Source: Botryllus schlosseri
Lineage: Eukaryota
Length of the DNA: 64,000 nucleotides
Assembly (NCBI GenBank): GCA_051294905.1
Contig: CM119372.1
Coordinates: 6,820,001-6,884,000 of the forward strand
Direction of reading: 5' to 3'
The translations under genes and the position numbers were made by a program. A model generated the notes under the pieces. It had not been told where the DNA came from, made no database searches, and saw only the letters and a program-made list of their open reading frames with translations. Below, piece after piece: positions 1 through 24,064 of this stretch (position 1 is its first letter; every line of letters starts with the position of its first letter).

Positions 1-1074
1 GCACAAAGGAGTTTCGCTAACAAACAGTAATGGCCAACATGACGCGAACGCGCGACGCGTTACTTTATTGACCGGCGCACAATATTACAATCCCATCAAT
101 GTATCTTACTGCGACAATATGTAAAACGGGATGGAAGTGTAATATCACAAATGCGGCATTGCGGCTTGGGTGATGTGAATACGGCTATAGGTCGAACAGT
201 ATTGATACGATCGTTGATAATACATGATGGATGCGGGAACGGTTATCTTGCGAAATGACAGATTTTCGTCGTCGATTACGTATGGTACAGCCGTCATATT
301 TGCGAAGGCGTCGTTGCTTTCTAACTGATCTTTGTTATCGCACATTATGAGAATTCCTTCGAAAGTTCACGACTTTCCGCCGCTTGTCAAATCGGAAGAG
401 TACATGTAATTGACTCTATTTCGTGTCTTGAGTTTGTGGTACGACAGAACGCTGCTCTGTCTAGTTGAAGCGTTACGGTAGCTAATGCGAGTTCGGTACC
501 CCCGTTCGTGCACGGATTCTTAAACTTTTTTGGTCGCGGAGCCCGTCAAATTTCATGGGCGTTAGTGTGCACCCCCACAATTTCACAAGCTGGTGATTAG
601 AAAAAGGTGTCTACTCTGTGACCAATCTCGAAATTTAGGCTATTGGCGTCTAAAAAGCTACCTGATAACTGATAAAAATGGCAATGGCACCAAGCTCAAC
701 TTTATATAGGCTATTCCATGCCTGAAACAACTTAACTTAGAACTAGACAAGTTTTAATCACTCACGCCGTCATTCCCGACGGGTAATCTGATTTTGTAGT
801 TACCGGTACTTGAAGTTCAACATTCCGCTTTCATATATACCCAAATAAACTAGTTCGCAGAACCCAGTTTGAGAACCATTACGACAGTGCTTTTCCGGAG
901 CTGGTTAACTGCTTTAGGACGTCTATGGTACAAAGTGAAACAGTGAACGCAACGCCTTTGAGCAAAACGGTAAGCAACGCTAGCTTAAAACTTTATCGAA
1001 ACTCAATCATATCACCGGCACACGACACGGCATTTTTCTGATATGGTGATCGAGTGTAGAAGATGATGAGGATA

Positions 1075-1990
1075 TTGCAAATGGTTGCCCGACATTAGGG
1101 CTGTTCAAAAATAACTTATTTTTCTGGATTCCAGTCGTTCAGTTTTCAAATTGTCAGGTTACCCTAAAAAACGTTGCACACCGAATTTGGTTCAATTCTA
1201 ACAAGTATAGGGCTCCGCGGATCCAATTAAAATTTTTAATTGAAACAGGAGAATTAAAAAAAAAATTTAAATTTTTCTGTCAACCCCATGAAATTGTTGA
1301 GCTGTCTTAAGAGACGATGCAAAACAAATTTGACTCAATTCCAACTAGTAGAAGTGGAGTTATTAAAGTTTTTCGTTGATAATCCTCGGATTATACACCA
1401 ATCAAGGATAATCCGAGAAATATCAACGAAAAACTCCAATAACTCCGCTTCTACAAGTTGGAATTGAGTCAAATTTGTTTTGCATCGTCTTTGCAGCCAG
1501 CTCAACAATTTCATGGGGTTGACAGAAAAATTTAAAATATTTTTTTTTAATTTTCCTGTTTAAATTAAAAATTTTAATTGGATCCGCGGAGCCCTATACT
1601 TGTTAGAATTGAACCAAATTTGGTGTGCAGCGTTTTTTTTAGGGTAACCTGACAATTTCGGCTGGAATCTAGGAAAAAAAAGTTATTTTTGAACAGCCCT
1701 ACCCGACATATGAGCATGCGACACAATAGAAAACGACAGTTCAGCAAGGAACACATCAGCATGCGTCACTTCAACATGTGACTGTATAACCCAAAAACTT
1801 ACCCTAACCAGAAACATAGCCCTGAAATTAACCCTTAGATATATCCTAACCCTAACCCAATCATAAAGCCTAACCCTAACCCAACCATAAACTCAGCCCT
1901 AACCCGTAATTTAACCCACATGCTCATGTGTCGCATGCCAAATTGTCGCATGCTGTAATGTCGCATGCTCATATGTCCACGGACCATTGC
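1075..1990. mobile_element. Short element with 18-bp subterminal inverted repeats and a degenerate (CCCTAA)-like core, interrupted by the 1096-1701 hAT
   Basis: gacatatgagcatgcgac at 1705-1722 and its exact reverse complement at 1960-1977; internal ccctaac/cctaac repeats and gtcgcatg tandem units; a homologous inverted copy lies at 32461-32906. Confidence 0.75.
1096..1701. mobile_element. Non-autonomous hAT-type foldback MITE (606 bp, almost fully palindromic)
   Basis: TIRs tagggctgttcaaaaataactt.../...aagttatttttgaacagcccta; exact 8-bp TSD cccgacat (1088-1095, 1702-1709); arms complementary to a ~13-nt loop near 1400-1415. Confidence 0.93.
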
Positions 1991-2124
1991 AAATGTACGA
2001 CGTAATATCGATGACAGTTGATTCGTCACCATCTCACATAGTATATGGGTAATTATGGACAATGTCCGCTGAAGGTATGTCAGTGTAGAATTCCCTGGAT
2101 TATCTCGGCTACTAACGTGTGTAT

Positions 2125-3075
2125 TAGGGATGGTGTGAACGTGAGGTTCACGTTCGCGTTCTGTGTGTGAACCTCGGAAAATTTGAGGTTCGCGTTCACA
2201 ACAGAACCTTGGTAGGTTCTGCACTGTGAACCTTTTTCATATATTGCAATTTTCACTTCATTATAACATCTTTGGTTCAAATTTATTGACTTTCAACTGC
2301 GGGCCACTCTATGCATGGAGCTGGCAGCATAAACATTCAACACTAAACGAGCATGCCCCTGACAATCTCAAAAATTTACATGTATTGTTACAAAAGTTTG
2401 CTCGAAATATCCAGCATTCCGTTTGTGCATATTAGTGTCTCTGTGCTGTGAGCTTGACCCGCAATCACATGACATCAAGAGCGAAATACACTGTATTTTG
2501 TCAGCAAATGATCCTTATTCAACCAATCAATGAGATTGATATCGTCTTCTGATGTAAAAATCTAGCAGGCGCGCGTACGGGGTCAATCTTGACTACATAT
2601 GTATACTGTATCATAAAAACCAAATCCGTGCGACTGGAGTGTTGGCTATACTGCTGTATAACTTGTTAATCGGTAGCAAGTATAAAAACCCATTTTACAC
2701 TCTGCTCAATATCCATGTGGCAATACTCAGACGCCGAACACATTGTCCGATCAGGTCGAAATTGTTGGCAAAGCGACGCAAGATACTGATTTTATGGGAT
2801 TATTATATCATTTGATTGCCCCAGTTGATACATTTGGCGACGTTTCAAACGTCAATATCTACTTAAGTACTGAGCTATTATGTGGCCCCGAGTCGTCGCT
2901 CGGTATCGTGTACAGTAGATTAATATAGGCAATCACCTAATTGAAATATGGGGTTGAAATTACCAATATGACGTCACGTGACGTCATGAGGTTCACGTTC
3001 GTGTTCACACAGAACCTTTCAAAAAGGTTCACGTTCACACGAACCTGAACCTTTCAGAGGTTCACACCATCCCTA
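2125..3075 (+). mobile_element. Non-autonomous hAT element, family A copy 1 (951 bp)
   Basis: TIR tagggatggtgtgaac/gttcacaccatcccta; exact 8-bp TSD gtgtgtat (2117-2124, 3076-3083); subterminal ggttca/gttcac repeats. Strand is arbitrary. Confidence 0.95.
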
Positions 3076-4439
3076 GTGTGTATTGCGTCACAACTAGGGA
3101 TTTGTGGAGCTGTCGACATCTGCTATTCCGGGCCCGTACTAGGAAGTCGCACGTAAACACGTGACACATCCGGTCTAGTCAACATCGGAAACAAGAGAGC
3201 CTGGGTTGCTTCGATCACACGCCAAGCAACGTAAACTAATCTCGACAAGCGAGAACGAATAGCAACCTATATGCGAAACAGATTGTAACCTTTATTGCTC
3301 TGCAACATTTACCGACTCAATTTAGGTCAAATTATGATACGGACACAGCTGCTTTCACATTCGCGAATGTTACGAGACGTGGTATTTATAATGCCAAATA
3401 CAATGGCGTTGGATTACGGGCGCTTACGCGTTTGCTGTAAAATATCGACTGTAATTTATCTTGACGTTTGTGACGGCGGAACTGACCGAAATTCATTCGC
3501 ACCACAAACAAGGGTCTCGAATTCGTTAATTTTCGCGCAACCTCATCAACAGAGGACATCAACAATCGTGCACTGATCTACAATACGTGACGTTGGAGTC
3601 GATTCGAGCACGGCGCGCAACGTTTCTGCGCGCCGGAGGTAAAGCTTTCGATGAATCGTGTTTGGCAGACGTTGCACCGTGATAAATGCGAACTGCAAGT
3701 GTGAGAAGTCACGTGCGGCAGTTTGTGTTGGTATCGATGCGTGAGATGGTACGCAAACAAGCCGTAAGTGATATTAATGAGCATACAAATACAGGCTTTT
3801 GGGAAATCGAAACGAAAAGGCTGACCAAATGCTATCTTTCGTAAGAAAATCAGTTTATGACCACGTTTTGTAAGACTAGGGTCTCACTTTGACAAAAAAA
3901 AAAACAATGTAATGTGGAATTTTCTGGCATCGAACAAGCATGTATGGGACATATGGACCGGATTCGGATACGTGCTTTTTTTCCAATACGGCCGGAGTTG
4001 AACCGCAGTCGGATTCCATTTTAAGGAATAAGGATTGCAGTCGGAACCCACAAAGCCCCGGAGATGTCACTAAGGAAGTATTTATATCAACGCAGAGAGC
4101 TCCCGTAGACGCTCTCCAACTGATGCTACTTATGCGATATGTTCAAATAGTTTCAGCCGTTTCCTTGTTCGGAATACTTCTGCGCTTCAGATTACTTTAA
4201 CCAACTCCGCGGGTCAGTGAGAGAGCTAAACATGTTGGCACGAAAGAACACCGATGTGATGACACGCGCGTTCACGTGGCTTTATACCCGCTTAAGCACG
4301 GCCTCTTAGAAGCCACACAATGAAAATTGCATCCCAGTTCCTGCACCATAGCATATTCATTGTGGAGAACTCTGTCTCCACTAAGGAGACAGGACGTTAT
4401 ATATTTTTGTCCTTGATGTTTCTGCGGCATATACACCCA

Positions 4440-4632
4440 CCCTGTATTTACATGGTTGCGCAGCATGCATGATGTGGATATGCCGCTAGACGACGAAGGT
4501 GCAGACATAGCCGTGAAAGGCGTTCTAAGTCTTGCACCACCTCCATGCTATCCCGGAAATGGTCAGCGTTCGGGGATTGAACCCACGACCTGCCGATCAA
4601 GTGGGACGCTCACGCTCAAATATCACGCTATC
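4440..4632 (-). mobile_element. Diverged tRNA-derived SINE
   Basis: Minus strand reads gatagcgtgata...ggcaggtcgtgggttcaatcccc (degenerate A box, B box GGTTCAATCCC), then gatagcatggagg, which resembles the other SINE copies. Confidence 0.65.
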
Positions 4633-4789
4633 TTGTCGGAATAACCATTTGTGTGCCCGGATACGTGGTAGTTATAGATTAAAATTGACACTTATCAATT
4701 GGGATACCCATGAGGCTGAAATTGTCACGACGAAAGTATACCGAAAGACCGAAACGTAGGATAAAGATAACAAAGCCCCATTCTCTTAC

Positions 4790-4994
4790 CGGGACAAACG
4801 AGGCATATTCCGCACAGTAGCGACGTCTCCGAATCGTCGAGCTTCATTGACAGTATGTGTCTCGCGAAATAAAACACGGAGTCGGTCAACGGACCGAAGC
4901 CGCACCTTTCTATTTGATCTCGATTCAAGGTTAATCCGTCTGAGAACGTCAGCGTTTCTTGTTCCGGGTCGTAGCTATTGCATATTCGAAGAAG
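4790..4994 (-). CDS. RAR: RAR exon: LBD helix 5 to helix 9
   Basis: Acceptor gtttcAG, donor GTAAGA; 205 nt; [68 protein letters not shown]. Confidence 0.96.
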
Positions 4995-7900
4995 CTGAAA
5001 CGGACAAGAGAGGCTTACCCCCCATCCCGGCGGCGCCTATGAAGTTGTGCACAGAGAGGAGATATTGCACCACACAATAGAGTTGGTCAACTACAACATG
5101 TACACATTGGAACTACATTTATACCTACAGAGTTTTTTTTAATTAGACCATAATTATGATTACTGAATTCGCAAAAACGAAAACTGAACTAAATTCCTAA
5201 CGACAAAAATCAAGTTCACTTTATATCGATTCCTAGTTCATTTTCAGAAGAATCAAAATGGCAAATGTCTGTACACCACGCTCGGCTCGTTTAGCACTAT
5301 ATGCAGTTCTCCCGTACCAATTTCAAGAAACCCAGAAATTAGATTAAAATTAAAATCAGAGTCTAGAAAATTTCATAAATTAGATTATAATTTGATTACA
5401 CGCATTTCGCTTTCATAGACAACTAGTATTATCTACGAAGACTGCCTCACAACGCATGTAAAATTTTCGTGGCAAATGGGTCCGAGCTTTCAGATATCCA
5501 AGCCTGCGTTGGACAGATAAACACTGCAAGTACCGATGATCGGCTAGTACTGCAGTTACAAACGATGCGGCCATAAGATGGCGACTGTGGCATTATGACA
5601 TCACCAAGCCTCATTCAATGAGGCATCTCCCACTATCCATCAGACCGCGTATAGGCACTAAAATATTTTGAGTGATTTTCCTATTTTTGTTGTGTTCAAA
5701 AATCGAAGGGATAACCGCATACGTCACCCGAATCCTAGTTTCGGTATCTCCTACTTACTAGTCGACGTCAACATGCAACCGGCTTACACGGAACATATTT
5801 ACGACTTGGCCCCGACAACCATGAGAGTGGGGTTGCATAATGTAGCACCCGGATCATTTCGTTTATAGCCGCTAAACCAATTATTAACCTCATTCGACCT
5901 CAAGGCAATGCCGTAAACAACATACTTTCGATTCATGCCGAATGCCTAATCATACCCATAAAGGGAGTATGTTCATGTCGCTGTTGAAATCAGCTCTGCG
6001 TAAAAATGGTCTGTGTGCCCACTGCCCATAGTGCCCAAACAAGTAAATTACAGGCACCATCCACTATTTTGGACAGAGTCTCACGTTCGGCCTACCATAA
6101 CCTCAATCGTCCTCGTTCGATACGTTGTTTACGCAATTGAACGCATGCGAAGGGCGCGTTTGAACAGATGGCAAATTCATTTTTAGCAATCAAACGCAAT
6201 ACGACGCCCTGGCTTTCGGGCGCATATTTCTCGTAAACGCTCTCGTTAATGTTAATGACGTTATCGGTGTTTTACGACAGTCGCGTAGCATACAGGAATG
6301 GAAACGTTATCATTATCATTATCGTAACTTTATTTCTTTGAGGAATTCTTACTAGTATATCCAGGCAAGCTGCTTTCAGCATGGTGACTTGGTCTGGAGT
6401 GGAGCACTCGTCGAAGCCCGGAACTCGCTTGGCGAATTGCACGATGTTGACAATACATTTCGCCGAACGATCGCAAAATTCTTGCCACAGTGTCAAATCT
6501 AATGAGCCGTCAGTAGACATCGGCGTCTCGCGCTGAAAAACATCGGTCCATGAGACGTCAACGCCTTGATAACACGCGGAGATACGTAGCCAGACACCAG
6601 TAGGAGGTCACTGTGCCAAAGGACAATTCAGCGTGTTGATGATGATGAGAATAACATTAACTTTGAAACACAATCGTTTCGGAAAAACGAAATTCATCCG
6701 TCGACACATTACTGATGTACAAAGACATTGTAAGTAACCAGTCGCTAGTAAATAACTAGATTTAGGCGACGCCTCGTGAATGGAGAAATTTTATTCTAGG
6801 TTAAAATGACAATGTGATTTATACAACGGCTCCTTCCTGAGATAAAGCATGTATAAGTTATCGGGATAATCGAAATATCATTATAACATTGATAGATTAC
6901 ACAATGTGAGTCATAGCGCGATATGATGGAAAGCATTCTGCAACTAGACGACAGAAATTGATAACGACGGGCCTCTCTAAACAGAAACAGCCCGCATTTA
7001 TTGTTCCCGATGTCTACAAGGCGCAGTGACAGAAGCGGCGCATTTCATCTTTTTAAAACAATGAGGAAGTTAGAAGATGCGCATGATCGACGATCATTGA
7101 TTGTTTACGCGTAATGGCAAAGTTAAAATGACATCAGACTGTTAATGCGTAAAATATTGCCGAGCTGTGTTCTTGATATATTTTCACACCCAAGATCATT
7201 GATGTGCATGTGCATTACTCATACTAGGTCACGTGAGAATTGAGGGCTGGGGCAACTAACATGTTGTCCCATGACCGCTACTAAGCCATGGATGTAACTG
7301 GGTGATCTTTTAGGGCAGTACTCGTCAAACGGTGTGCACGGTGCGCCAGAGGGTACATCCAAACATGCATGCGTACACAAGTACGAAAACGGACGCAAGG
7401 GTGCATGATAAACTTGTCACACTATAGCAGTAGTTCTAAACCTAGGGGTGTCGTTCGCGAATGGGCTGAACTTTTCTAGTTATAGGCAACCAATTACATG
7501 CAATATACATACATTGAATGCTTCTAAGCATACAAGGTGCACGAGTTCGTCACAACAACTTTAGGGGTTCACCACAAAAAAGGATGAAGAAAACTGCTTC
7601 AAGGTACGCCGAAATTTCCGCTATTACGTCAACGGGTATGAGATGACATTACATTCCTGCCGAGCTGCGGGCTTGAATCCATGCGATTCAGCGGCATATT
7701 TCTCAAGCACATGATTAGTGAAAACGGCCTCACTGCTGCCATTCCGTCAGTAAATTTATACTGGTAAAGACGCTATGCTGAGAATTTCGGACCCGAAGTT
7801 TCTATTATAAAACAGCATCAACGAAACTGTTAGGTGATTTCCCAAGAAGTGCCGACCCCACTTGCGGTTAACATGGCACGATAACTGCTGCGTAGGCCCT

Positions 7901-10900
7901 ACTCACCGAACGAAATTTGTTCACGTCTTTAATGTCGACAAACGTTTCAACGTGGGCACGAGTGATAGTATCGATAAGTCGTCTGATTTGCACCATTGAA
8001 GTTGTGAATTCCACCGACGGACGGGCAGGCAAGCACGACTTTTCCTTCCCCCTCTTTTTTCGGCGATCGTTTCGGACAGCTGAAATAGAAATGAGTACAC
8101 TTACTGCATACGACACCAACGTACTCCATTCTAGCGTAGAATTCAGTTGTGTATCACAACGCTCATACAAGACCATTTGTCAATACTTGACAGCGGCGAA
8201 GATACCGTTGTCTGGTAGGTATGTGAGTCTAGGTTCGGCTTGACCGATGAGCAGTAACTTGTAGGGATGGTGTGAACCTCTGAAAGGTTCGGGTTCGTGT
8301 GAACGCGAACCTTTTTGAAAGGTTCTGTGTGAACACGAACGTGAACCTCGTGACGTCATATTGCTAATTCCAACCCTATCTTTCAATGAAGTGATAGCCT
8401 ATATTAATGTACACGATACCTAGCGAAGACTCGGGTCACATAATGTCACATTGCTGAAGTACATATTGGCGTTTTAAACGCCGCTAAATGTTATCAACGG
8501 ATATAATAATCTCATAATATCAATACATTCCGACGCTTTGCCAACAATTTCGACGAGGACTTACTAGGGAATATAAGCTTACGCCTTAACGGTCTTTGCC
8601 AGACCGGACAATGTGTTCGGAGTCTGAGTATTGCTACATTGATATTGAGCAGAGTGTAAAACGAGTTTCTATACTCGCTACCGATACCATAAGCAACAAG
8701 TTGTATAGCAGTAGCCAGCACCTTAATCGCACGGATTTGGTTTTAATGATACAGTAAAGATATGAAGTCAAGATTGACCCCGTACGCCCGCTCGATATTT
8801 TACATTAAAAAACGATATCAATGTCATTGATTGGTTGAATAAGCATCATTCGCTGACTACGTATATCGCTCGTGATGTTGTGTGATTGCGGGTCAAGCTC
8901 ATAGCAGAGAGTCACTAAATATTCACAAACGGAAAGCTGGATATTTCGAGAAATTTTTTGTAACAAAAAAGCAAGTAAAACTTTTAAGGTTGTCAAGGTG
9001 CATGCTCGTTTATTAGTGTTGATTTTTTATGCTGCCAGCGCCATGCATACAGTGACACGCAGTTGAAATGCAATAAATTTGAACCAAAGATCTTATAACG
9101 AAGTGCAAATTACAATTTACCAAAAAGGTTCACAGTGCAGAACCTACCAAGGTTCTGTTGTGAACACGAACCTCTAAATTTCCGAGGTTCACACACAGAA
9201 CGCGAACGTGAACCTCACGTTCACACCATCCCTAGTAACTTGCCTTCGCAAAACACCGCGACTCTTGTTTACTTAACTCTGATTAATGATTGATATCAAA
9301 GCACCGCGCCTTACAGCGTATGTTTTTGATAGCTGCATGCTCGAAAACCACTGTTCCCCTTCGATGTGCGTTGTCAAAAATAGAATGGGCTGATAATTAG
9401 GCTTCGTATCCGACTTTGCGGACTGGTGTGCTATGTTTTTTACAATAATCAATCACAAAATAAGGCGAAGCCGTTTCGAACATGCATTACGTACGCGAGT
9501 TCTTACTGCACCGGTACATCCTGCGAGGCGGAAATGTGAATAGTGAACGAACGATCAAACAAAGATGACACCATTCACCATCAGTTTTTGCATGACTTTC
9601 AGCGACGACCCGTGACATTATTTAGTTAGGATTGCGTCACCTCGTCTGGCGAAATAACTTCAAATATCCTCTAGTCCGAAAAAACATACGAGACATGTAG
9701 TACAAAGTAACTGGGAAGTCGTATTCAACCTGCAGCATTGTCACACAGTGCAATGAAATAGGTATGGTCGACAAAGTACCAAATTTCCTTTAATGTGATG
9801 TTGAACTGGCTATTATGCAGCCATCGGTCTGTATCACAAAGACGTTTTCAAGATCTATATAATCGCCGCTCTAAAGCGCGTTCCGTCGCACACAGCTTCG
9901 AAATAGTTCAACGGCGGCCGAGGTCATCGAGTACACGCCAGCAATCCCAAGAGAGGTGAGAAAATTAGTTCTGCACGTAGCGTCTCGCTATCGCAAACCA
10001 ATAAAATATTGAACGCGCGGCCTCGGGGTCATCAGTTCATAGGACGGATGAAGTTAAAAGTGTCATAGTAGATCGAATATCTTGCGCTTGAGAACTACCG
10101 GATGCAGACAACTTGAGTAATTTGCTTTACCGCGAGCGTAATAATCACAAGTTGACCTTGCGATTATATAGTAAAGCTGTCGGGAATATTCAAAATGTAT
10201 GCCCCACGCGTGAACTGAGTTCATATGAACTCACTTAAACGAGGAAGACGGAGAGCGTGAACTGCGTTACACTTTTACACACGTTAATAAATTTGGGTGC
10301 ATCACATTGCCAAGTTCACAGTGTATGACATTGTCATTAAGAGACGGGAAATATAGTCCGAAGGCCTGGACGTGAGAGGACAAATCGCGTATGGACAAAT
10401 AACCAATGGATGCTCAATATTAAGTTCATTCAAACGCGAAACGACGAAACAGCATAAAGCTAAACGCTAGTTACTGAGCGTCGACGTCATTCATGATTGC
10501 CGTTGGTTTCCAATCTCATATTGTAGTTCCATTGCGTTTCCTGACTAGAAACAGGCGCTAGCAATCTGAGCATACGAAACAAATGGCTGAACGTTCGGTT
10601 GAATGAGAACACGCGGCATTTTGCGGTAGAAGGCTGAGTCGAATTCACCACCAGAATATCGGCGTCACGAAAGGGCGTACAAAGACTGCCGGCACCGATA
10701 TGCCGCTCCGCGAACAGCAAAATATATTGGCATCATGACATGAGTAATGCAACCGTGTCAACATGTTTGCTACTATGCGAGCATATCGATATCGCGCCTT
10801 CCCGTACGCCGGCATGAACTCGGCGAAGTCAAATGATTCATTGGCCTGAAATCCACTCCAGCGAAAGTTCACAAACGGACAAATATTCCAAGTTGACGCG

Positions 10901-13900
10901 TAGCCAACTGGCCATTCGCGGTCGTTTTCCATAACAAGACGCAAGCAGTCTAAACACGCCGCGCCCCTGAATCGATGCTAGGTTTGCAATTTGAGAAATG
11001 AAAGGTACACACGACGATAAATAGGCGCCGTGTGTATACTACGGGGATAGGCGTTTAGTCTACCGTTATCGAAAAGGCCTGCGTATAATATCAGGCATAG
11101 CGACTGGACGCCAGTACGAATATAAATCACTGAACGAGAATTCTCGCGAAAGAAACGCATATACGGCACAGGTCGCGCCTAACCTTGAGCTATCAATTTT
11201 CGGGTCGTGATATTCGTTCACACCCAAGACCGGGCCCCGGGGTCGTGTGTATTGAATCGAATGTTCCTATAGGTTGTTCTCTGATTGGAGTTCAGCTTTG
11301 GACCCTGCCTAATTTTGGCCGACTATGTATACAAACGATTCAATATCTTTAATGTACTTATGTAGGGTCACCATACGTCCTCTTTTAAGAGGATTTATCC
11401 TCTTTTTTGACTTCGGAGGACGCCCAAATGTCATTTTTTGAGAATTTGTCCTCTTTTTTGAGAATTCTGGTTAAATACAGGGTAAAATTCGACCGATACA
11501 CGGTACATCATCACTGAAGTAACGCTTCGGCGGCTATTTCGGGATCTGAGCCGGAAAAATGACTTTTTTTAAATTGTGCCCTTGGCAACAGACTTGCACA
11601 ACTAGACAATTCTTCTCGTTGTCTACAGTTAGACCAATTGAAGCGAAATGCCTGTAAACTATTTCTAATGTAATTTGAAAAATATTTCTTTGCAGTAATT
11701 CTAATCATAATTTAATCTGTGACATGTTTTTATGCTCAAATTTCAACGCCTATCTATTTTATGGTTTTCCTGAAAATGCTAGAGGAGAACTGTATAGGGC
11801 GAAACGAGCCAAGCTTACTGTACGGTACAGACATTTTACATTCTCGCGCTTATCAGAATAAACTCTGGTTTCATATGAACTGATCTTGGTTCGATTTCCA
11901 AGTTTTCGAAAATTCAGTAATTTAATTCTACCGTAATCTACTTTGAAAAAAATGTGTAGCTATAATTATAATTCTAGTCTAATTTAGAAAATACTGTGTA
12001 GCTATAATTATAATTCTAGTCTAATTTAGAAAATACTGTGTAGCTATAATTGCAATTAGAATCTAATGTGGCAAGGCTGAAAATTATCTACTTCTTCAAC
12101 TCATTTTGCCCAACAAATAATGCGGACTGGGAATGTTGGTCGAAAATTAGCTTAAAACACGGGTCCGTCAATTTATACGGTCCGGGACATACTGACGTTT
12201 ATATATTCGAAATGTTTAGAGGTACAATCGTACGTAAACTAGATTAATATACTAGACGCGAAAGCAAACGGACATTCGTGATGAAGTGCAGAGTGCAGAC
12301 CAGAGCCACGTTCAAAGCTGCGCGTCTAGTAAGCCAGACGCTAAGATCGTGCTCTGTAAATAGCAGCACGAAACCGCTTGGCGGTCGAAACATGTTCCTA
12401 CAAGGGTCGTAAACCACGCCGTGAACTATCGCGAACTTTCAAGCTACAGCAAACGACCTTGGTTCGGGCTTGCGCATTTCGTCACCACCTCTTGACCTGT
12501 GTCATTCGGGTAATTATGTTTTCAAAACTCGTCCATAAAGTTCTGAGTCACCCTTTTCGCCACTTTTTAACCGTTTATAAGTCACTCTTGAATCACCACT
12601 TCAGAAAACCTATTTCTGTTATCGGTGATTTAACAAGAAAGGCATCGCAATAGGAAAATCAGATCTCTTATCGACGGCAAATAGGGCGGCCGGCTGGAAA
12701 TAGAAAAGGAACGCACGTAGCAGATTTCGAAGCGATACGGGAACACATGATTGCGCCTCAAGAATCAGATGTGACCTTACGTCCTTTCGATACAGTCGCA
12801 TATATCGCTATTAACATCGATTTTTTTGCACAGTACAACTCACCATATTATCTTTAAGATTTATGAAGGACGCAGCTAATCTTATATGTATTCGTCGTGG
12901 AAATCTGAATGACGCGAATATGCACTATTTATATACTGTATCAAGTCAAGTATTGAAAAAAATGCAGCGATAACGGAGAATCGACAAGGTGTTATTACGA
13001 TGTGCAACAATCTTGTCATTCAATTTTGAAGGGGATTTAGTATATCTTTGGCAACGTTCTTATCCTTAGCATAAAGCAGGTATATAACGTAAAGGTTGCA
13101 TTGGCTCTATCTTCGTCAGAGAACGGACGAGCATGAGCATATAGTTCTGGATTCGAAAAATTAACAGATTCCAAGATTTTGACCGGGTTTGATTTTACGA
13201 TTTCCTGGGATCTGAAGACCAAATTAGGAGTAAGATTTGTATTTGTATATTAAGCCCTCTCGTTTGATCATTGTGGTGATGAATCTGATAATTTCTCCGG
13301 CCAAGAAACGGAATGAGAAAGTTAGTTTATGATTAATGCACAATCGCAAAAAAAGCCACTAAACACATCCCTTCACACTTGTAAGCAGAATAACTGACAG
13401 CAGGGACGAAATATAATGATTGCTGTTACCGTTCCTAGAAAATTACCAAAACACGACTCAAAGGTATTGATTTCGTGACGCCTTCGGATTGGAGAGGATT
13501 TTAGTTGCGGATTACAACCCAAAGGCGTTAAACTCGATTTCAGGATAATCTTGACCTTTTGATACAGGAGAAACAGCGAAGTATTACGTCATTCCTAATC
13601 TCCTCCAATCGCGAGAAATACGGGTTTAAGAGATATACTTTAATCTAGTTTTTACGGCCATCGGTGCCACTTAACGTTAAAAGCGGATAACAACCCGGCA
13701 GGAAAAATGCAACGCGATCCACGTGACTATATGAGCATGACTAAATCGTATTAAAATCGAAGGCAAATTCATTTTTACACTAGTACATCGCATTTAATTT
13801 CAGTGTTCAGGACAGCAGGACTATTTCTTTAGCGCACCTACTGTCGTAAAATTGTAACGCCGGAATTACGACTAGGTATCCTAGAAGCACATAGAAGTAT

Positions 13901-16900
13901 GCAAAACTGTATATCATATATCATATTTCGTATTCATTCATTCTATCCATACATTAGTCGTATTCAACAATCCATAGTGGTACCACAATTGGAATCGATA
14001 AACGTGAAATTGACTTACATTCTCTGAGCATACCGGACTTGATACATTTCTGAAAACGACAATATTGACACCGGCTCCTCGTCTGTTTATTGATTATGCA
14101 GGATTTATTTCGATGACACGAGTATTCCACGTTCTTCTGGACAGTCCTTCTGAAGAATCCCTGTAGTGCAAATTAGCAACTGTAACAGCCCGACCATACC
14201 ACGTGGCAACAGTATATACATCAAACTTGCTAATTGCAATCCGTAATGGCAGATTTACAAACGGATGGAACGTATAACTTACCAGTCAAGATAGACTTGA
14301 AATTTCAATCAAAAGTCAAATGCAAAGAGACGATTTCAAAGTGGTAAGACCTATTTGAAGATTCGTAAAGTCATCCTAACACAGCACTACAGATTGCAAC
14401 AAATCATTAGGATTAACAACGCCAACTTCGACGACAATTCGACGCACACAGATGGCGACGAAGTACAGAAAGACCGATGAAACGAGCAGTCGGGTAACAG
14501 CGCAAGATTCATATTTACGAAAGTATCAAATGAAAAATTGATGACGCTGGCGCCATATACAGCCCAATCCAAAAGCGTTTTACATGGTCACGTAAAACCG
14601 TATTTGAGTAATCATTAAATTGTCACGTGTTTCCAAGACTCCTTCCCAGTCAATAAAATCGATTATCGACGTACTCAACAGGTCAAATACATTGAGTGTT
14701 TTAAGACTATCGACCGAGTCCCAGTAGACACCTACACTCCATAGATGCTATAAATTGAAAGGTCATTGGTCGTGGTTCTTCTGCTTCGTTTATTTATTAT
14801 TTTTATCATTTCAAAACACCACAAGATTGCGATACAATGAAGAGATAGGACGGTGTAGAAAAGACTTGGGCTAGTCTTTCAATCAGACACCTCCACTGGC
14901 CCAGTGAGCGTGTAGTTATAAGAGACATGGAATTGGAGATACCATAAAACAAAAAAGGACATGAAATGAACCGGTATGTGTCCGTTATAGAAATCCATAG
15001 TCTGTTCGTGGGCCGGTAATCTCGAACAAGGATTAGTAAAACAGTTATGGTTACATAGTCCTGATGTAACCCAACTGTATAACCGACATTGAGGGCCGCA
15101 GAGCACTACGAGTGTCCAGTACTTTTTCAGAACGCAATAAGCCGGGTCATTATTAGAGGTGACGTCTACTAGAATAAGTACTTTTTCAGATATTGCTTCC
15201 GCATTCACGCCTTGTGACTTGGTAATTGGGTCCAAACGGCTAACACATGACAGCCGATAAGGTGTCGGCGTATTTACGTATGGGGCGTGTATCATTTCAT
15301 GAACACTGCAAATAGCAGCGCTCTGCGAATTTAGATGTTGCCGATGCTTCTTTGACACAGGGTGAGAAAGGCTTGAAAAGCCTGCTATCATTATTCCTCG
15401 ACTCAGTAATGTCAACAACGCAAAGAGCGCTTTCGGCCGCGTTGGAATGTGACTTTATAGATTACGGCGTTGTTTACCAACGTACCAGTACCATTGATTA
15501 TTCACCTAGTCTGTCCAACTTCTTTGCACAGTAAGCACACACACAACCTGTGTGAACCGTTTTCAAAGATTGTTGTTGATATTCAGCCAAAGGATTTTCA
15601 TTTTTGTGAATTTAACCACAAGATGTTACCAGGTCCAAAGGAATTGATGATTTTCACTTCAGTTTTATATTATCGTACTCTGATTCCAGATCCCTTCATT
15701 AAATACCACGATTGGAATCAGATAAGTCACTTGTTATTACATAAATCATATATCATCGCAAGCTCCAAACATATGTGCGTAATCCAGATGATAGAATACA
15801 TAGATGCTCGCGCGCTGTATACATAACAAGTATAGTACAGTGATCGGGAAGCGTATACCAGCTCGTATACCAACGGTTCGCGACACGAGTTCATTCAAAG
15901 CCTAAAGGGATAAACCATTAAATCCAAGTGTTGAAAATCGAATGCCAGTAAAGCGAAAACGCACCGAATCACGATTTGTGCAGTGCGCACGAACTCGCCA
16001 GACAGAGTTCAATCGCGTATCAGCGGACATAGCCGAACTCGATAAAGCCAGACGGGTTGAATCAACAGAGAGGCAGCGGAGGAAGGTAACAGTACCGAGA
16101 TAATTACAACCGACGCGCACCCGAACGTTAGGTCAAGCCGTGACATTACTTCTGTTCGTTTACGCGGCTCTGCGATCCTACGGGCGAATCGCAAGCGTTG
16201 CGAAAACCTTCACGCAAATGCTAGCCCGACAAATTATGCGATTACAAATACTGACTTGCGACCAGGGCACAGTATGGCATGGTATGGAACGAAACGAAAT
16301 TGGCGTGGAAATTTCAAAGTATGGTATGGGAACGTTTGGCAGTTTTGCCAGAACCATGAAAAAGGCTCTACTTTTGATTTGTCAAGTCGATTGCATACCT
16401 CCCAAAACACAGACAGATCTCTGTTCAAATCTCAAATTTTAACTCAGACCCTGGTCAAGATATTTTTGAAGAGAACAATGCGACGATGATTAGGCAACCT
16501 ATACATCGCTGATATATGACACAAAGACCTTGGGAATTGAATTGATGCATCACGGCTTGTTGTATGAATAATTCCATTCAAAATAATTACAATGCAAACG
16601 CTGGATAATTTCAACACATGACAAATAGATCTGAAAAATCTGAAATATTGGGGAAACGAGAAAGTATGGAAAATATATCATATATCTTATGGAAGAATGT
16701 TGCTATTGTATTGAAAATTGTAAGTATGGTAGGGAACCAGTGCAGCGGGTATGGAATATTGAAATTTCCTGTCCCATACCATACCAACCATACTATGCCC
16801 TGCGATTGAAACTATGACGGACTGCCCGTACAATCGGCATTCGCTTTACACAGGATAACGAATCAAGTCAAAACAAGGTATCGCGGAATTCATAACTCCA

Positions 16901-18163
16901 ACCAAAACAATCCCGACAGAATCTGTAATCCCTAGAATGCAATTCAGTTTAACGGCGACAATGGCCTGGAAACTGGTGAATAGTACGCTTTCAATGCAGC
17001 GAAACGCCGCATTATGCCTTCCACAATTCTTACGCTCTCATCACGTTTCCGCGTATTGGCGAGAGCGCAATCATGTGCACATTGTGCAGTTGCAGAATGC
17101 TGTAGCAACGTGCATACGCCCGAAAATGCCCATACGACGTTACCTGTTATACACGCTTGATATAGAGAATGGATATGGGCGCTATTACGGTTCGTATCGA
17201 AAATGCTGATTTCAATAGTCGCGCTATAATGCCGTGGAATTCGACCTGACAGATGTATTGCATCCGAGGGTATTACCGAACGTATTCCTCAACGCGACTG
17301 TGAGAGTGTGATGTGAGTACACGAGCTAGTTGCCGCCCGGCGTACTCACGTTTGCTAGTTATCCGCTTTGATGGCAGATGTGGCATCATATTGCGTGATA
17401 TCGTCGCGACAGCTACATAAAATACGTGGAATGTGTTAACGTCAAAAACGCGGCCATGTTTTTAAATAACGATTCTGCGTCAAAGTTGCTTTCATAAAAT
17501 TAATGCCGTTGGCCGCGAACGAAGGCATGTATCGAGAATGTAGAATATTTCCTCAATAATGTCGTGGTGCACAAGAGCCTACCCAATTAGTTTCGACTGA
17601 TTACGAAATATTACAGGTCAACAGTATTGTAAATGCAATCGTTTATGAGTTAGGTCAAGTTTTACTTCGCGCACGGCTCTAAAATGTCGAAAACTACCGT
17701 ATGTATTTGCGACGAGGTTCACAGATCATATAAGAGAGGTTAATGAACTTTTCGGCCGGGAGTTACCTGATACGTAGACGCTGTCTGTGGAAAAACAGAA
17801 TAAGATGCGACCAAATGGTCAGTACATTTCTAGCAGAAGCGGACTTCGTTACGAGTCATACAGTTTCCATACATCAATCACACGGCTACTATGACAGACT
17901 TTGAACAACACCGTTAAACTATAGATAACTAACCTACATAGTTAAACAGACCAATCATGCCCACAATTATGTCACGCGGAAAAGAATACTGGTCTTTACC
18001 TTGCAGCCTTCGCACGATGATACGCCGTAGTGATACCCCGATGATCGATCGGAACAAACCAAACACGGTTTATATACTCGGGGAGGGGGCGATGGCGAAG
18101 TCGCGGAGCCCATCGAGTCCAAATCGGATGACCCGTCGCTATAACATGCCAGCATGTCTCTCC
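4790..18163 (-). CDS. RAR: Retinoic acid receptor (NR1B), partial gene model: five coding exons 18163-18000, 14160-14019, 8079-7907, 6532-6353, 4994-4790; N-terminal and helix 9-12 exons not located
   Basis: All five exons have AG/GT boundaries and join in one frame (phases 1,0,1,0,0,1). Translation gives [33 protein letters not shown]|[21 protein letters not shown]...GMLRE|[10 protein letters not shown]...|...[26 protein letters not shown]...LKAACLDIL|LLRIC...[10 protein letters not shown]...[10 protein letters not shown]. Motifs and intron positions match vertebrate RAR genes as I recall them. Confidence 0.97.
5155..5425 (+). repeat. Old interspersed repeat, inverted homolog of 11620-11925
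   Basis: Shared blocks ttactgaatt, aaatgtctgtac, ggctcgttt, cagttctcc and gcatttcgctt are colinear with the reverse complement of 11620-11925. Strand is arbitrary. Confidence 0.7.
6353..6532 (-). CDS. RAR: RAR exon: LBD helices 3-5
   Basis: Acceptor tttttcAG, donor GTAAGA; 180 nt; [30 protein letters not shown]...[14 protein letters not shown]. Confidence 0.96.
7315..7440 (+). repeat. hAT-like MITE fragment shared with 61987-62080
   Basis: cagtactcgtcaaacggtgtgcac...caagggtgcatgataaacttgtcacactatagcag aligns with cagtgttcttcaaccgttgtgcac...caagggtgcatggcgtacttgtcacactaaagcag. Confidence 0.55.
7907..8079 (-). CDS. RAR: RAR exon: T-box/hinge and helix 1
   Basis: Acceptor ttctatttcAG, donor GTGAGT; 173 nt; [14 protein letters not shown]...[13 protein letters not shown]. 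Confidence 0.95.
8262..9234 (-). mobile_element. Non-autonomous hAT element, family A copy 2 (973 bp), inverted relative to copy 1
   Basis: Same TIRs; exact 8-bp TSD gtaacttg (8254-8261, 9235-9242). Its reverse complement is colinear with 2125-3075: first ~50 nt identical, interior roughly 80-85% by eye. Confidence 0.95.
9680..9810 (+). repeat. Relic of the interior of the family B hAT (22475-23502)
   Basis: catacgagacatgtagtacaaag...ttgtcacacagtgcaatgaaataggtatggtcgacaaagtaccaaa aligns with the internal region of both family B copies; no TIRs visible. Confidence 0.65.
10026..10039 (+). promoter_or_regulatory. Perfect DR2 retinoic acid response element (candidate)
   Basis: GGGTCA-tc-AGTTCA matches RGKTCA-N2-RGKTCA and sits in a cluster of 11 perfect half-sites (9905-10428). 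Function untested. Confidence 0.6.
11620..11925 (-). repeat. Old interspersed repeat, inverted homolog of 5155-5425
   Basis: See 5155-5425. Confidence 0.7.
11953..12051. repeat. Perfect 42-bp tandem repeat, ~2.35 copies
   Basis: Unit tgtgtagctataattataattctagtctaatttagaaaatac starts at 11953, 11995 and 12037. Confidence 0.95.
14019..14160 (-). CDS. RAR: RAR exon: recognition helix and second zinc finger (not in the supplied ORF track)
   Basis: Acceptor gcactacAG, donor GTAAGT; 142 nt; [47 protein letters not shown]. Confidence 0.97.
14789..15035 (-). mobile_element. 3' end of a CR1/L2-type LINE (or LINE-tailed SINE)
   Basis: Shares caccacaagattgcgatacaatgaa...agtctttcaatcagaca with the ORF2-bearing copy at 35241-35853. 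Confidence 0.8.
16263..16802. mobile_element. MITE with 15-bp TIRs (hAT-like CAGGG end)
   Basis: cagggcacagtatgg / ccatactatgccctg (1 mismatch), subterminal tatgg/ccata repeats; no matching 8-bp TSD seen. Confidence 0.7.
18000..18163 (-). CDS. RAR: RAR exon: proline-rich B region and first zinc finger to the P-box (CEGCK)
   Basis: Acceptor tttttcctcAG (intron ends 18164), donor GTAAAG at 17999; 164 nt; encodes [32 protein letters not shown]. Confidence 0.96.
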
Positions 18164-22233: not shown

Positions 22234-22276
<43 letters not shown>

Positions 22277-22474
22277 TGATATTCTTTTTCGCCTGCACCA
22301 TCGAGATGCTTTGACGACGGAGTTGCGATACGGCCCCATGAGGTCATCTAGTCTGCGCCCCCGTTTATTTTTTCTCCTCCATACTATCCGTGATTGCTGA
22401 GCGCCTAGCAGGATAGCTGCGGATACCAATTTTCGAGTCTTTGGTATGACCCGACCGGGGATCGAACTCACGAC

Positions 22475-22989
22475 TAGGGCTGGGCACAATGATTCGAGTA
22501 CTCGAATCTGAATCGAGCATTAATTTTAATGATTCGAGTCGAGTAGTAAAAAACGTTTTTTTCGAGTAATGAAAATATACGCTCCTCGCAAATGAAAGTT
22601 GATTTACTAACGGGAATTATAGTTTTGATACTATTTTCCACCGACGAAGCCTTGAAATCTTGATTGGCCGTGTCGCAGCATACGAGACATTGTACAGAGC
22701 TACGAACGTTACTGGAAATAACATATTTCCGAAGTCATGATCATCCCACAACATTGTCACGAAGTGCAATGAAATCGGTATTGTCGAAAAAATATCAAAG
22801 TATCTTTATTGTAACGGATGCCAGGCATTATATTCTTTGTGGTGGCATAAAAGGTACATATTCGAAATTTCACATAGTTCATTCTGTTGTGACGTCATAA
22901 TGAGTGATACTCGAATACTCGACTCGACTCGAAGCATAAAACGTGATTCAGAATCGAATCACTCACGTACTCGATTTTGCCCAGCCCTA
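22475..22989 (+). mobile_element. Non-autonomous hAT element, family B copy 1 (515 bp)
   Basis: TIR tagggctgggca/tgcccagcccta; flanked by ctcacgac (22467-22474) and ctcacgac (22990-22997). Confidence 0.93.
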
Positions 22990-22997
22990 CTCACGAC

Positions 22998-23502
22998 TAG
23001 GGCTGGGCACAATGATTCGAGTACTCGAATCTGAATCGAGTATTAATTTTAATGATTCGAGTCGAGTAGTAAAATACGATTTTTTTCGAGTACTGAAATT
23101 ATACTCTCCTCGCCACTGAAAGCTAAGTTATCAACGAGAATCGATACTAATTTTCACTGCTGAAGCCTGGGAGCCTCTATTGGCCGTATCGTAGCATACG
23201 AAACATATAGTACAAAGCTACTAACGTTACTAGAAATAACCCAGTTCCGAAGTCATGATCATCCCACAACTTTGTCACCAAGTGCAATGAAATCGGCATG
23301 GTCGAAAAAATACCAAAATCTCTTTAATGTGATGGATAACATGAATTATAGTCTTTGTGGTCGCATAAAAGGTACAGATTTGAAATTCGACATATTACAT
23401 TCTGTTGTGACGCTATAATGGGTGATACTCGATTACTCGACTCGAAGCATTTCACGTGATTCAGAATCGAATCACTCAGGTACTCGATTTTGCCCAGCCC
23501 TA
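22998..23502 (+). mobile_element. Non-autonomous hAT element, family B copy 2 (505 bp), head-to-tail with copy 1
   Basis: Same TIRs; flanked by ctcacgac (22990-22997) and cccacgac (23503-23510). Confidence 0.93.
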
Positions 23503-24064
23503 CCCACGACCTACCGCTCGAGAAGCCGGACGCATAACCATTACACTATCTCGCTCGGCACATATAAGTTGTCATCGTCGGTACTCAAGTAGAAGTAGAA
23601 GTAGCGACTTACAAGTAAGTAAAAAATTAAGTATTCTAGGCCTGGTTTTACCTAAAAAACTAAAAACGTATAAGTAGTCAATATTTTGACTTAATTAGGC
23701 TAAGTCATAACCACTCGAGGAAGTGGTGCAAGTATAGGCAAAATCGACTTGAAGTAGCCTACTTCGTTACTGACCACTTCTGAGTGCCATCCAGTGTCAT
23801 GCGGTGGGGTTTATGATTCGGCAAGCAGATTCAGATTTGCAAATACAGTATATCAAACTTAAAATATATTAGCTGATTCAGTTGACGACATTTTTGTTAT
23901 CGAGTTTATTATTACCGTTTCTTGGGGAAATATATCCACACGGAAATTTCCTAATATGAATATTATGGATTTCAGTGCTTAGTAAGACATTAGACATAAA
24001 CAGGTAAGTTTGGAGTGCGCTTTTACCTAATCCGGCTCGTTCGTGAATCGCATGATGGTTTAGG

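What the first reader, a model, noticed from the sequence alone, without database searches (positions are those of the whole stretch)
2125..9234. Inverted ~1-kb hAT pair brackets a 558-nt RAR exon cassette that could circularise into a stop-free ORF
Seen: family A copies at 2125-3075 and 8262-9234 are in opposite orientation in the introns flanking exons 8079-7907, 6532-6353 and 4994-4790. One copy is only 183 nt from the upstream acceptor. The exons total 173+180+205=558 nt (186 codons) and the cassette starts and ends in phase 1. A back-splice junction would read G+CT (Ala), with no stop around the circle and internal ATGs. Established: inverted intronic repeats promote back-splicing, exon skipping and A-to-I editing. 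Inference: a TE-driven circRAR with rolling-circle coding potential, and/or an in-frame skipped isoform that keeps the DBD and lacks most of the LBD.
Basis: partly seen in the sequence, partly recalled or inferred. Interest (0 to 1): 0.7.

Follow-up and report, generated by a model that had tools for sequence, protein, structure and literature searches.

The report
Inverted hAT transposon pair around RAR exons
Two short hAT transposon copies sit in opposite orientation in the introns around three retinoic-acid-receptor exons and could pair in the pre-mRNA, but the RNA data available show only normal linear splicing, so the proposed circular RNA remains an untested and rather generic prediction.

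Summary
Copies at 2125-3075 and 8262-9234 are non-autonomous hAT elements. They have 16-bp terminal inverted repeats and perfect 8-bp target-site duplications. A 3.1-kb autonomous partner elsewhere in the genome encodes a BED plus hAT-dimerisation transposase. The two copies are inverted and lie in the introns flanking RAR exons 8079-7907, 6532-6353 and 4994-4790.

RNA joints in four runs confirm those exon borders. The cassette is 558 nt, starts and ends in phase 1, and has no stop round the circle. In silico the arms form about 836 intermolecular base pairs.

No back-splice joint appeared in one raw RNA-seq run or in three contig sets, but exon depth was only about 10 reads, so the test is badly underpowered. 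The skipped isoform and editing in the repeats could not be tested.

The stop-free circle follows automatically from phase symmetry. The family has thousands of copies, so on the order of a hundred such inverted pairs are expected per genome.

Most likely these are two independent, neutral intronic insertions, with at most by-product circRNA. This is a known kind of arrangement and of low interest. The scan has no similar note on other DNA.

The parts
8262..9234 (-). Right (upstream in the pre-mRNA) non-autonomous hAT copy, 973 bp, older subfamily
   Evidence: Limits set by the terminal inverted repeats. At least 40 genomic copies are 93-97% identical. It lies in the 5,939-nt intron 8080-14018, 183 nt from the acceptor at 8079.
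8254..8261 (.). 8-bp target-site duplication GTAACTTG of the right copy (second copy at 9235-9242)
   Evidence: Perfect match of both flanks (locus L014).
2125..3075 (+). Left (downstream in the pre-mRNA) non-autonomous hAT copy, 951 bp, younger subfamily
   Evidence: Limits set by the terminal inverted repeats. At least 40 genomic copies are 95-99% identical. It lies in the 5,572-nt intron between 4790 and the next exon, which starts 783 nt before the window.
2117..2124 (.). 8-bp target-site duplication GTGTGTAT of the left copy (second copy at 3076-3083)
   Evidence: Perfect match of both flanks (locus L001).
7907..8079 (-). RAR cassette exon 1 (173 nt): T-box/hinge and helix 1 of the ligand-binding domain
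   Evidence: AG/GT borders and translation VRNDRRKK.... RNA joint 6532>7907 in 4 runs. The contig loose end at 8079 reads into the upstream exon.
6353..6532 (-). RAR cassette exon 2 (180 nt): helices 3 to 4/5 of the ligand-binding domain
   Evidence: Translation matches RAR gamma/beta/alpha ligand-binding domains at E about 1e-15. RNA joints on both sides.
4790..4994 (-). RAR cassette exon 3 (205 nt): helix 5 to about helix 8 of the ligand-binding domain
   Evidence: Translation matches RAR alpha/beta/gamma at E about 1e-25. RNA joint 4994>6353. The loose end at 4790 reads into the downstream exon.
14019..14160 (-). Upstream RAR exon (142 nt): second zinc finger of the DNA-binding domain, ending ...GMLRE plus one base T
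   Evidence: Sequence read. The last 30 nt equal the contig loose ends at 8079. The acceptor at 14160 is inferred from sequence only.

Best explanation
The stretch is the middle of a retinoic acid receptor (RAR) gene on the minus strand. Two non-autonomous hAT DNA transposons of about 950 bp inserted independently, and in opposite orientation, into the two introns flanking the three hinge and ligand-binding-domain exons. They belong to two subfamilies of one abundant family, which shares its ends with a 3.1-kb autonomous hAT element that encodes a 620-aa open reading frame with BED and hAT-dimerisation domains and would be the likely source of transposase (inferred; no mobilisation was tested).

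Shown: the gene is expressed, and the three exons are spliced linearly to each other and to their normal neighbours. Also shown in silico: in the pre-mRNA the two copies can form an imperfect duplex of about 840 bp that loops out 5.2 kb containing the three exons.

Inferred: by analogy with Alu pairs and the Drosophila laccase2 DNAREP1 pair, this duplex may occasionally bring donor 4790 and acceptor 8079 together and yield a 558-nt circle. This would most likely be a low-level splicing by-product with no coding role. I put detectable back-splicing in deep total RNA at about 35%, and a translated circle at about 1%. The in-frame, stop-free property comes from the phase 1/phase 1 exon structure of the RAR gene, not from the transposons.
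For: - hAT identity. The terminal inverted repeats are present and 8-bp target-site duplications are perfect in 13 of 18 copies examined. An autonomous copy at L050:4827-7965 has the same terminal repeats and a perfect 8-bp duplication, and its termini align to the short copies at 81-92%. Its 620-aa ORF carries zf-BED and Dimer_Tnp_hAT. The short copies have no ORF above 69 aa.
- Independent insertions. The two copies have different target-site duplications. Each is much closer to copies elsewhere in the genome (99% and 97%) than to the other (80% gapped).
- RAR identity.
- Linear splicing. Joints 4994>6353 and 6532>7907 appear in four runs. Transcript contigs of 1,006-1,404 nt span all three exons and continue into the neighbouring exons.
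- No back-splice joint.
- Pairing. RNAcofold gives 836 intermolecular pairs and a gain of -738 kcal/mol, against 0 for a shuffled arm. No other copy of the family lies in 74 kb, so nothing competes for pairing.
- By-product view of circles driven by young transposons: PMC8516420. Not every complementary pair supports circularisation: PMC4201285.
Against: The negative RNA result is weak. Exon depth was about 10 reads, only 6% of the raw run was read, the library is not known to be ribo-depleted, and contigs drop rare variants. An appreciable circRNA is therefore not excluded.

Several features are more favourable than many validated cases. The arms are long (about 950 nt), one arm lies 183 nt from the acceptor, and no competing copy exists within either intron. 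For comparison, laccase2 has 75% identity over 106 nt and 69% over 272 nt (PMC4617980). Neutrality of the insertions is inferred, not measured.
Confidence: 0.7

Rival explanations
1. The pair drives appreciable production of a 558-nt exonic circRNA (circRAR). This competes with linear splicing and so tunes RAR mRNA output, or acts as a regulatory RNA.
For: The predicted inter-arm duplex is very strong. One arm is 183 nt from the acceptor. No competing copies lie in the same introns. The mechanism is established for Alu pairs and for DNAREP1 pairs (PMC4201285, PMC4617980).
Against: No back-splice joint in four runs (underpowered). Linear contigs dominate. Very stable hairpins can inhibit circularisation, and not all repeats work (PMC4201285). 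The left copy is 1.7 kb from the donor. Most circles driven by young transposons look like by-products (PMC8516420).
Confidence: 0.12
2. The circle is translated by rolling-circle read-through of its stop-free 186-codon frame. The product would be a concatemer or fragment of the RAR hinge and ligand-binding domain.
For: The frame has 0 stops round the circle and four in-frame ATG codons. Rolling-circle translation of artificial stop-free circles has been shown in human cells (PMC4639774).
Against: The circle itself has not been observed. There is no evidence of an internal ribosome entry element. Being stop-free follows automatically from a 558-nt in-frame cassette. Translation of endogenous circRNAs is generally rare and debated (PMC11724312).
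Confidence: 0.01
3. Pairing of the arms loops out the cassette and promotes skipping from 14019 to the downstream exon. The junction codon would be T+AT (Tyr), in frame. The isoform would keep the DNA-binding domain but lack the hinge and about the first two thirds of the ligand-binding domain.
For: The frame is preserved, because 558 is a multiple of 3 and the flanking exon borders are confirmed. Exon skipping and circle formation are mechanistically linked through lariat precursors (PMC4479058).
Against: All transcript contigs at 8079 and 4790 continue linearly through the cassette. No skip junction could be examined. The truncated domain would probably not fold.
Confidence: 0.05
4. The intramolecular double-stranded RNA formed by the arms is a substrate for A-to-I editing or small-RNA production, without affecting splicing. 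This does not exclude the other readings.
For: A predicted duplex of about 840 bp. Long intronic inverted repeats are the classical substrates, from general knowledge of ADAR and endo-siRNA pathways.
Against: Not tested: the arms were left out of the laid stretch. With thousands of near-identical copies, reads could not be assigned to this locus. In the 5.2 kb between the arms there is no excess of T>C changes on the + strand, which is how editing of this minus-strand transcript would appear. The differences seen are present in all reads and so look like alleles.
Confidence: 0.15

Closest known systems
Drosophila laccase2 and PlexA circRNAs flanked by inverted DNAREP1_DM transposons (PMC4617980)
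   Same: An invertebrate gene in which two copies of a DNA-transposon family lie inverted in the introns on either side of coding exons. Base-pairing is predicted to bring the back-splice sites together.
   Different: There the circle is abundant and its dependence on the repeats was shown by mutagenesis. Here no circle has been seen. The arms here are longer and more complementary (about 950 nt, 80% identical with gaps counted (85-97% within ungapped segments)), they enclose three exons rather than one, and one arm is 1.7 kb from its splice site.
Human circRNAs driven by inverted Alu pairs, such as ZKSCAN1, HIPK3 and EPHB4 (PMC4201285), and the link between young transposons and circRNAs in mammals (PMC8516420)
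   Same: Young, abundant, species-specific repeats in flanking introns form reverse-complementary pairs. Multi-exon circles use the canonical splice sites.
   Different: The repeats here are class II hAT deletion derivatives, not SINEs. The product is unverified.
Non-autonomous (MITE-like) hAT elements
   Same: 8-bp target-site duplications, short terminal inverted repeats, no coding capacity, termini shared with an autonomous BED/hAT transposase element, and high copy number.
   Different: Nothing unusual. At about 950 bp they are at the long end for MITE-like elements.
Stop-free ('infinite ORF') circular RNAs translated by a rolling-circle mechanism (PMC4639774)
   Same: A circle whose length is a multiple of three with no in-frame stop.
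   Different: Those were engineered RNAs. Here neither the circle nor its translation is shown.

Membership tests
hAT superfamily, non-autonomous element | 8-bp target-site duplication | tested here: met
   Both RAR copies have perfect 8-bp duplications. Across the family, 13 of 18 copies are perfect and 14 of 18 have at most 1 mismatch.
hAT superfamily, non-autonomous element | Short terminal inverted repeats shared with an autonomous element that encodes a hAT transposase | tested here: met
   A 16-bp perfect terminal inverted repeat. L050:4827-7965 has the same repeats, an 8-bp duplication, termini 81-92% identical to the short copies, and a 620-aa ORF with zf-BED (E 2.7e-7) and Dimer_Tnp_hAT (E 6.9e-18).
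hAT superfamily, non-autonomous element | No transposase coding capacity in the short copies | tested here: met
   The longest ORFs inside 2125-3075 and 8262-9234 are 69 aa or shorter.
Retinoic acid receptor (NR1B) | Ligand-binding domain closest to RARs among nuclear receptors | tested here: met
   The exon 3 translation scores E 6.5e-25 against RAR alpha, against 1.6e-9 for the thyroid hormone receptor. Exon 2 scores 6.9e-16 against RAR gamma.
Retinoic acid receptor (NR1B) | Two C4 zinc fingers followed by the T-box/hinge | tested here: met
   Cys-rich ORFs at 17967-18155 and 13954-14130. The hinge VRNDRRKK lies in cassette exon 1. These were read from the sequence; no profile search of the DNA-binding domain was run.
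Retinoic acid receptor (NR1B) | Retinoic acid binding | not testable with these tools
   Another note of the scan (s1-300866) claims loss of a ligand-anchoring Arg. This was not examined here.
Exonic circRNA driven by flanking inverted repeats | Reverse-complementary sequences in the introns on both sides of the circularised exons | tested here: met
Exonic circRNA driven by flanking inverted repeats | Functional canonical acceptor and donor at the would-be back-splice sites | tested here: met
   The AG at 8080-8081 and the GT at 4788-4789, read on the minus strand, are both used in linear splicing.
Exonic circRNA driven by flanking inverted repeats | Back-splice junction reads (donor 4790 joined to acceptor 8079) | tested here: inconclusive
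   None in X23 raw reads or in the contigs of X1, X3 and X4. Depth was too low to exclude a minor species.
Exonic circRNA driven by flanking inverted repeats | Resistance to RNase R / lack of a poly(A) tail | not testable with these tools
   This is a bench assay.
Translated stop-free circRNA | Open frame round the whole circle with an in-frame AUG | tested here: met
   0 stops in the coding frame of the 558-nt circle and four Met codons. This follows automatically from the phase 1/phase 1 cassette.
Translated stop-free circRNA | Cap-independent initiation, ribosome association, and a peptide across the junction | not testable with these tools
   No ribosome-profiling or proteome data were available.

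The most novel reading that the evidence does not exclude
A recently inserted hAT copy created an inverted pair that makes the RAR gene of this animal produce a 558-nt circle of its hinge and ligand-binding-domain exons. The circle would be translated round and round into a ligand-binding-domain fragment or concatemer that interferes with retinoid signalling. That would be a transposon-born, possibly polymorphic, regulator of a key developmental receptor.
Probability: 0.01. Interest if true: 0.65.

Novelty: new member of a known kind. Interest (0 to 1): 0.15.

Why it matters
If a circle were shown, this would be a clean natural example outside mammals and flies of a class II transposon pair creating a circRNA in a developmental transcription-factor gene. 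The left copy is up to 99% identical to its relatives, so it may be polymorphic in the population, which would allow a natural with-versus-without comparison. As it stands, the case shows that such arrangements are expected by chance in a genome with thousands of copies. It also shows that the 'coding' look of the circle is a by-product of exon phases. That is useful calibration for the scan, not a discovery.

Tried and rejected
1. Protein-database search for fragments carrying a permuted (exon 3 to exon 1) junction, using cassette exon 1 (57 aa) as query. No candidates were found at all. The length limit of 31-100 aa excludes normal RAR products, so the blank means nothing.
2. The one protein-representative search (exon 3) gave only RAR-like proteins at 63% identity or less, with no names. 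It confirmed the family but did not give a full-length protein from this species to use as a probe.
3. Sampling 20 further family copies with 20-kb flanks, to measure how often inverted partners occur. The chance estimate therefore rests on first-look candidate counts.
4. Rfam scan of 1-14200: no RNA family at gathering score.
5. First RNAduplex/cofold script timed out and was rerun successfully.
6. I considered laying reads on the repeats to look for editing and rejected it.
7. I considered whether the 'hAT dimer' noted at 22236-23550 belongs to the same family. It does not: blastn finds only two copies in 74 kb.
8. Literature on RAR-derived circRNAs: one passing mention of circRARA in a goat testis data set (PMC10172654) and nothing functional.
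Full report
**Observation**

The window is G000:C2:6820001-6884000 of a 495.5-Mb animal genome. Ten collinear inverted segments, each 85-97% complementary, link 2122-3075 to 8262-9237. A gapped alignment and blastn give 80% identity over about 1,015 columns.

The three exons have AG acceptors and GT donors and measure 173, 180 and 205 nt. The 558-nt cassette starts and ends in phase 1 and has no stop in the coding frame round the circle. The junction codon would be G+CT (Ala), and the cassette contains four in-frame Met codons.

**What the repeats are**

- Both copies begin with TAGGGATGGTGTGAAC and end with its reverse complement.
- Both are flanked by perfect 8-bp duplications, GTGTGTAT for the left copy and GTAACTTG for the right one.
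- Among 18 copies fetched from the genome, 13 have perfect 8-bp duplications and one more has a single mismatch.
- The copies have no ORF longer than 69 aa.
- The genome holds many hAT transposase genes: 150 scored matches to Dimer_Tnp_hAT, all over the cut-off.
- One of these, L050:4827-7965, is a 3,139-bp element with the same terminal inverted repeats and a perfect 8-bp duplication. Its termini align to the short copies at 81-92%.
- That element has an open 620-aa frame carrying zf-BED and the hAT dimerisation domain.

These are non-autonomous, internally deleted relatives of an autonomous hAT.

The left copy is up to 99% identical to copies elsewhere, and at least 40 copies are 95-99% identical to it. 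The right copy belongs to a second subfamily, with at least 40 copies at 93-97%. The two have different target-site duplications. They are thus two independent insertions, and the left one is probably very recent.

**What the gene is**

Translations of exons 2 and 3 match the ligand-binding domains of RAR alpha, beta and gamma at E about 1e-15 and 1e-25. This is far better than the match to thyroid hormone receptors or Rev-erb. Exon 1 carries the hinge VRNDRRKK. The two zinc-finger exons lie upstream at about 18.1 kb and at 14160-14019.

The next exon downstream is 159 nt and begins DRPGLEEPEKV. It starts 783 nt before the window, at C2:6819217.

The right copy therefore lies in the 5,939-nt upstream intron, 183 nt from the acceptor. 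The left copy lies in the 5,572-nt downstream intron, 1,714 nt from the donor. By the structure alignments, the cassette covers the hinge plus roughly the first 155 of about 235 residues of the ligand-binding domain.

**RNA evidence**

I laid one raw bulk RNA-seq run (X23) and the contigs of three further runs from three other studies (X1, X3, X4) on window:3100-8255.

- All four runs show the joints 4994>6353 and 6532>7907, with CT..AC ends on the + strand, which is GT..AG on the minus strand.
- Transcript contigs of 1,006, 1,404 and 1,008 nt cover all three exons.
- The loose ends of those contigs at 8079 and 4790 read exactly into the upstream exon ending at 14019 and into the downstream exon.
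- The gene is therefore expressed, and the cassette is spliced linearly as predicted.
- No joint that goes back from 4790 to 8079 was listed in any run.

This negative result is weak, for four reasons:

- Only about 6% of X23 was read.
- Exon depth was about 10 reads and the two linear joints had 4 and 14 reads, while a joint needs at least 3 reads to be listed.
- X23 shows no depth in most intron bins, which fits a poly(A)-type library.
- Contigs drop rare variants.

I left the repeats out of the laid stretch on purpose, so editing in them is untested. Between the arms the differences from the genome are present in all reads and look like alleles. There is no excess of T>C on the + strand, which is how A-to-I editing of this minus-strand transcript would appear.

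**Pairing potential**

RNAcofold of the two arms as transcribed gives 836 intermolecular base pairs and a gain of -738 kcal/mol over the separately folded arms. A shuffled arm gives zero intermolecular pairs and zero gain.

No other copy of the family lies in the 74 kb examined. The only other inverted matches in the gene are:

- a self-contained palindrome at 1096-1701;
- a small 59-nt pair at 1705-1763 / 1919-1977, 78% complementary;
- a 30-nt match between the region just before the window (-244 to -215) and 1717-1746;
- a weak pair, 69% complementary, at 5208-5399 / 11695-11891.

By the rules learned from Alu pairs and from the laccase2 DNAREP1 pair, the geometry is therefore favourable. 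In those systems 30-40 nt of complementarity suffices, but not all repeats work, and very stable hairpins can inhibit circularisation (PMC4201285, PMC4617980).

**How special is it?**

The family gives more than 5,000 first-look candidates in 495.5 Mb (these are lower bounds). That is about one copy per 95 kb. On that density, about 7% of copies should have an inverted partner within 7 kb. This predicts on the order of 10^2 such pairs per genome.

The stop-free frame is not an added coincidence either. Any run of coding exons whose total length is a multiple of three is open round the circle unless the junction codon is a stop. Here that property comes from the phase 1/phase 1 structure of the RAR gene. 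In mammals, circles driven by young transposons appear to be mostly species-specific by-products of splicing (PMC8516420).

**Verdict**

The anatomy is confirmed in full. The mechanism proposed is the standard one and is physically plausible, but no product has been seen.

- My best reading, at confidence 0.7, is two neutral, independent hAT insertions in RAR introns, with at most low-level by-product back-splicing.
- I put detectable back-splicing in deep total RNA at about 35%.
- I put a quantitatively meaningful circRAR at about 12%.
- I put a skipped isoform at about 5%.
- I put translation of a circle at about 1%.

This is a new instance of a known kind and of low interest, unless the simple RNA tests listed above turn out positive.

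Noticed in passing
window 1096-1701: A palindromic element of about 600 bp in the same intron as the left hAT copy. It has nested arm pairs, 1166-1264/1540-1638 (96%) and 1256-1394/1408-1546 (91%, 13-nt loop), and both strands give near-identical 59-aa ORFs. It is a foldback-type repeat that would form a long hairpin in the RAR pre-mRNA.
   Followed up: partly
window 4391-4437 (and 4540-4620): A piece of about 47 nt in the intron, 350 nt from the donor of cassette exon 3, attracts thousands of reads and contigs that match only this piece and then run on into unlike sequence or poly-T. It is probably the tail of an abundant expressed repeat. Next to it lies a tRNA-like SINE segment (...GGGATTGAACCC...). 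Rfam gave no hit.
   Followed up: partly
window 5208-5399 and 11695-11891: A second, weak inverted pair (69% over 199 nt) brackets only the first two cassette exons, which total 353 nt and are not a multiple of three. The region 5178-5360 also shows raised contig depth, so it is another repeat family.
   Followed up: no
L050:4827-7965 (G000:C7:22227827-22230965): An apparently intact autonomous hAT: 3,139 bp, perfect terminal inverted repeats, 8-bp duplication GTGTTTAG, and an open 620-aa BED plus hAT-dimerisation ORF. A 1,006-bp non-autonomous copy with its own duplication lies 1 kb away at L050:2805-3810. Together with short copies that are 99% identical to one another, this suggests the family may still be active.
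   Followed up: partly
window 4872, 4890, 4947, 6511-6512: Exonic differences between the assembly and all RNA reads or contigs of several runs. They are fixed within each run, so they look like allelic or strain differences in the RAR coding sequence, not editing. DNA runs of the species hold only about half of the 31-letter words, which points to high polymorphism.
   Followed up: no
window 4950-4975 (cassette exon 3): The helix-5 stretch reads ...[12 protein letters not shown].... From memory, vertebrate RARs have an Arg-containing ...RICTRY... here, and another note of the scan (s1-300866) addresses this possible loss of the ligand-anchoring Arg. It was not examined here.
   Followed up: no
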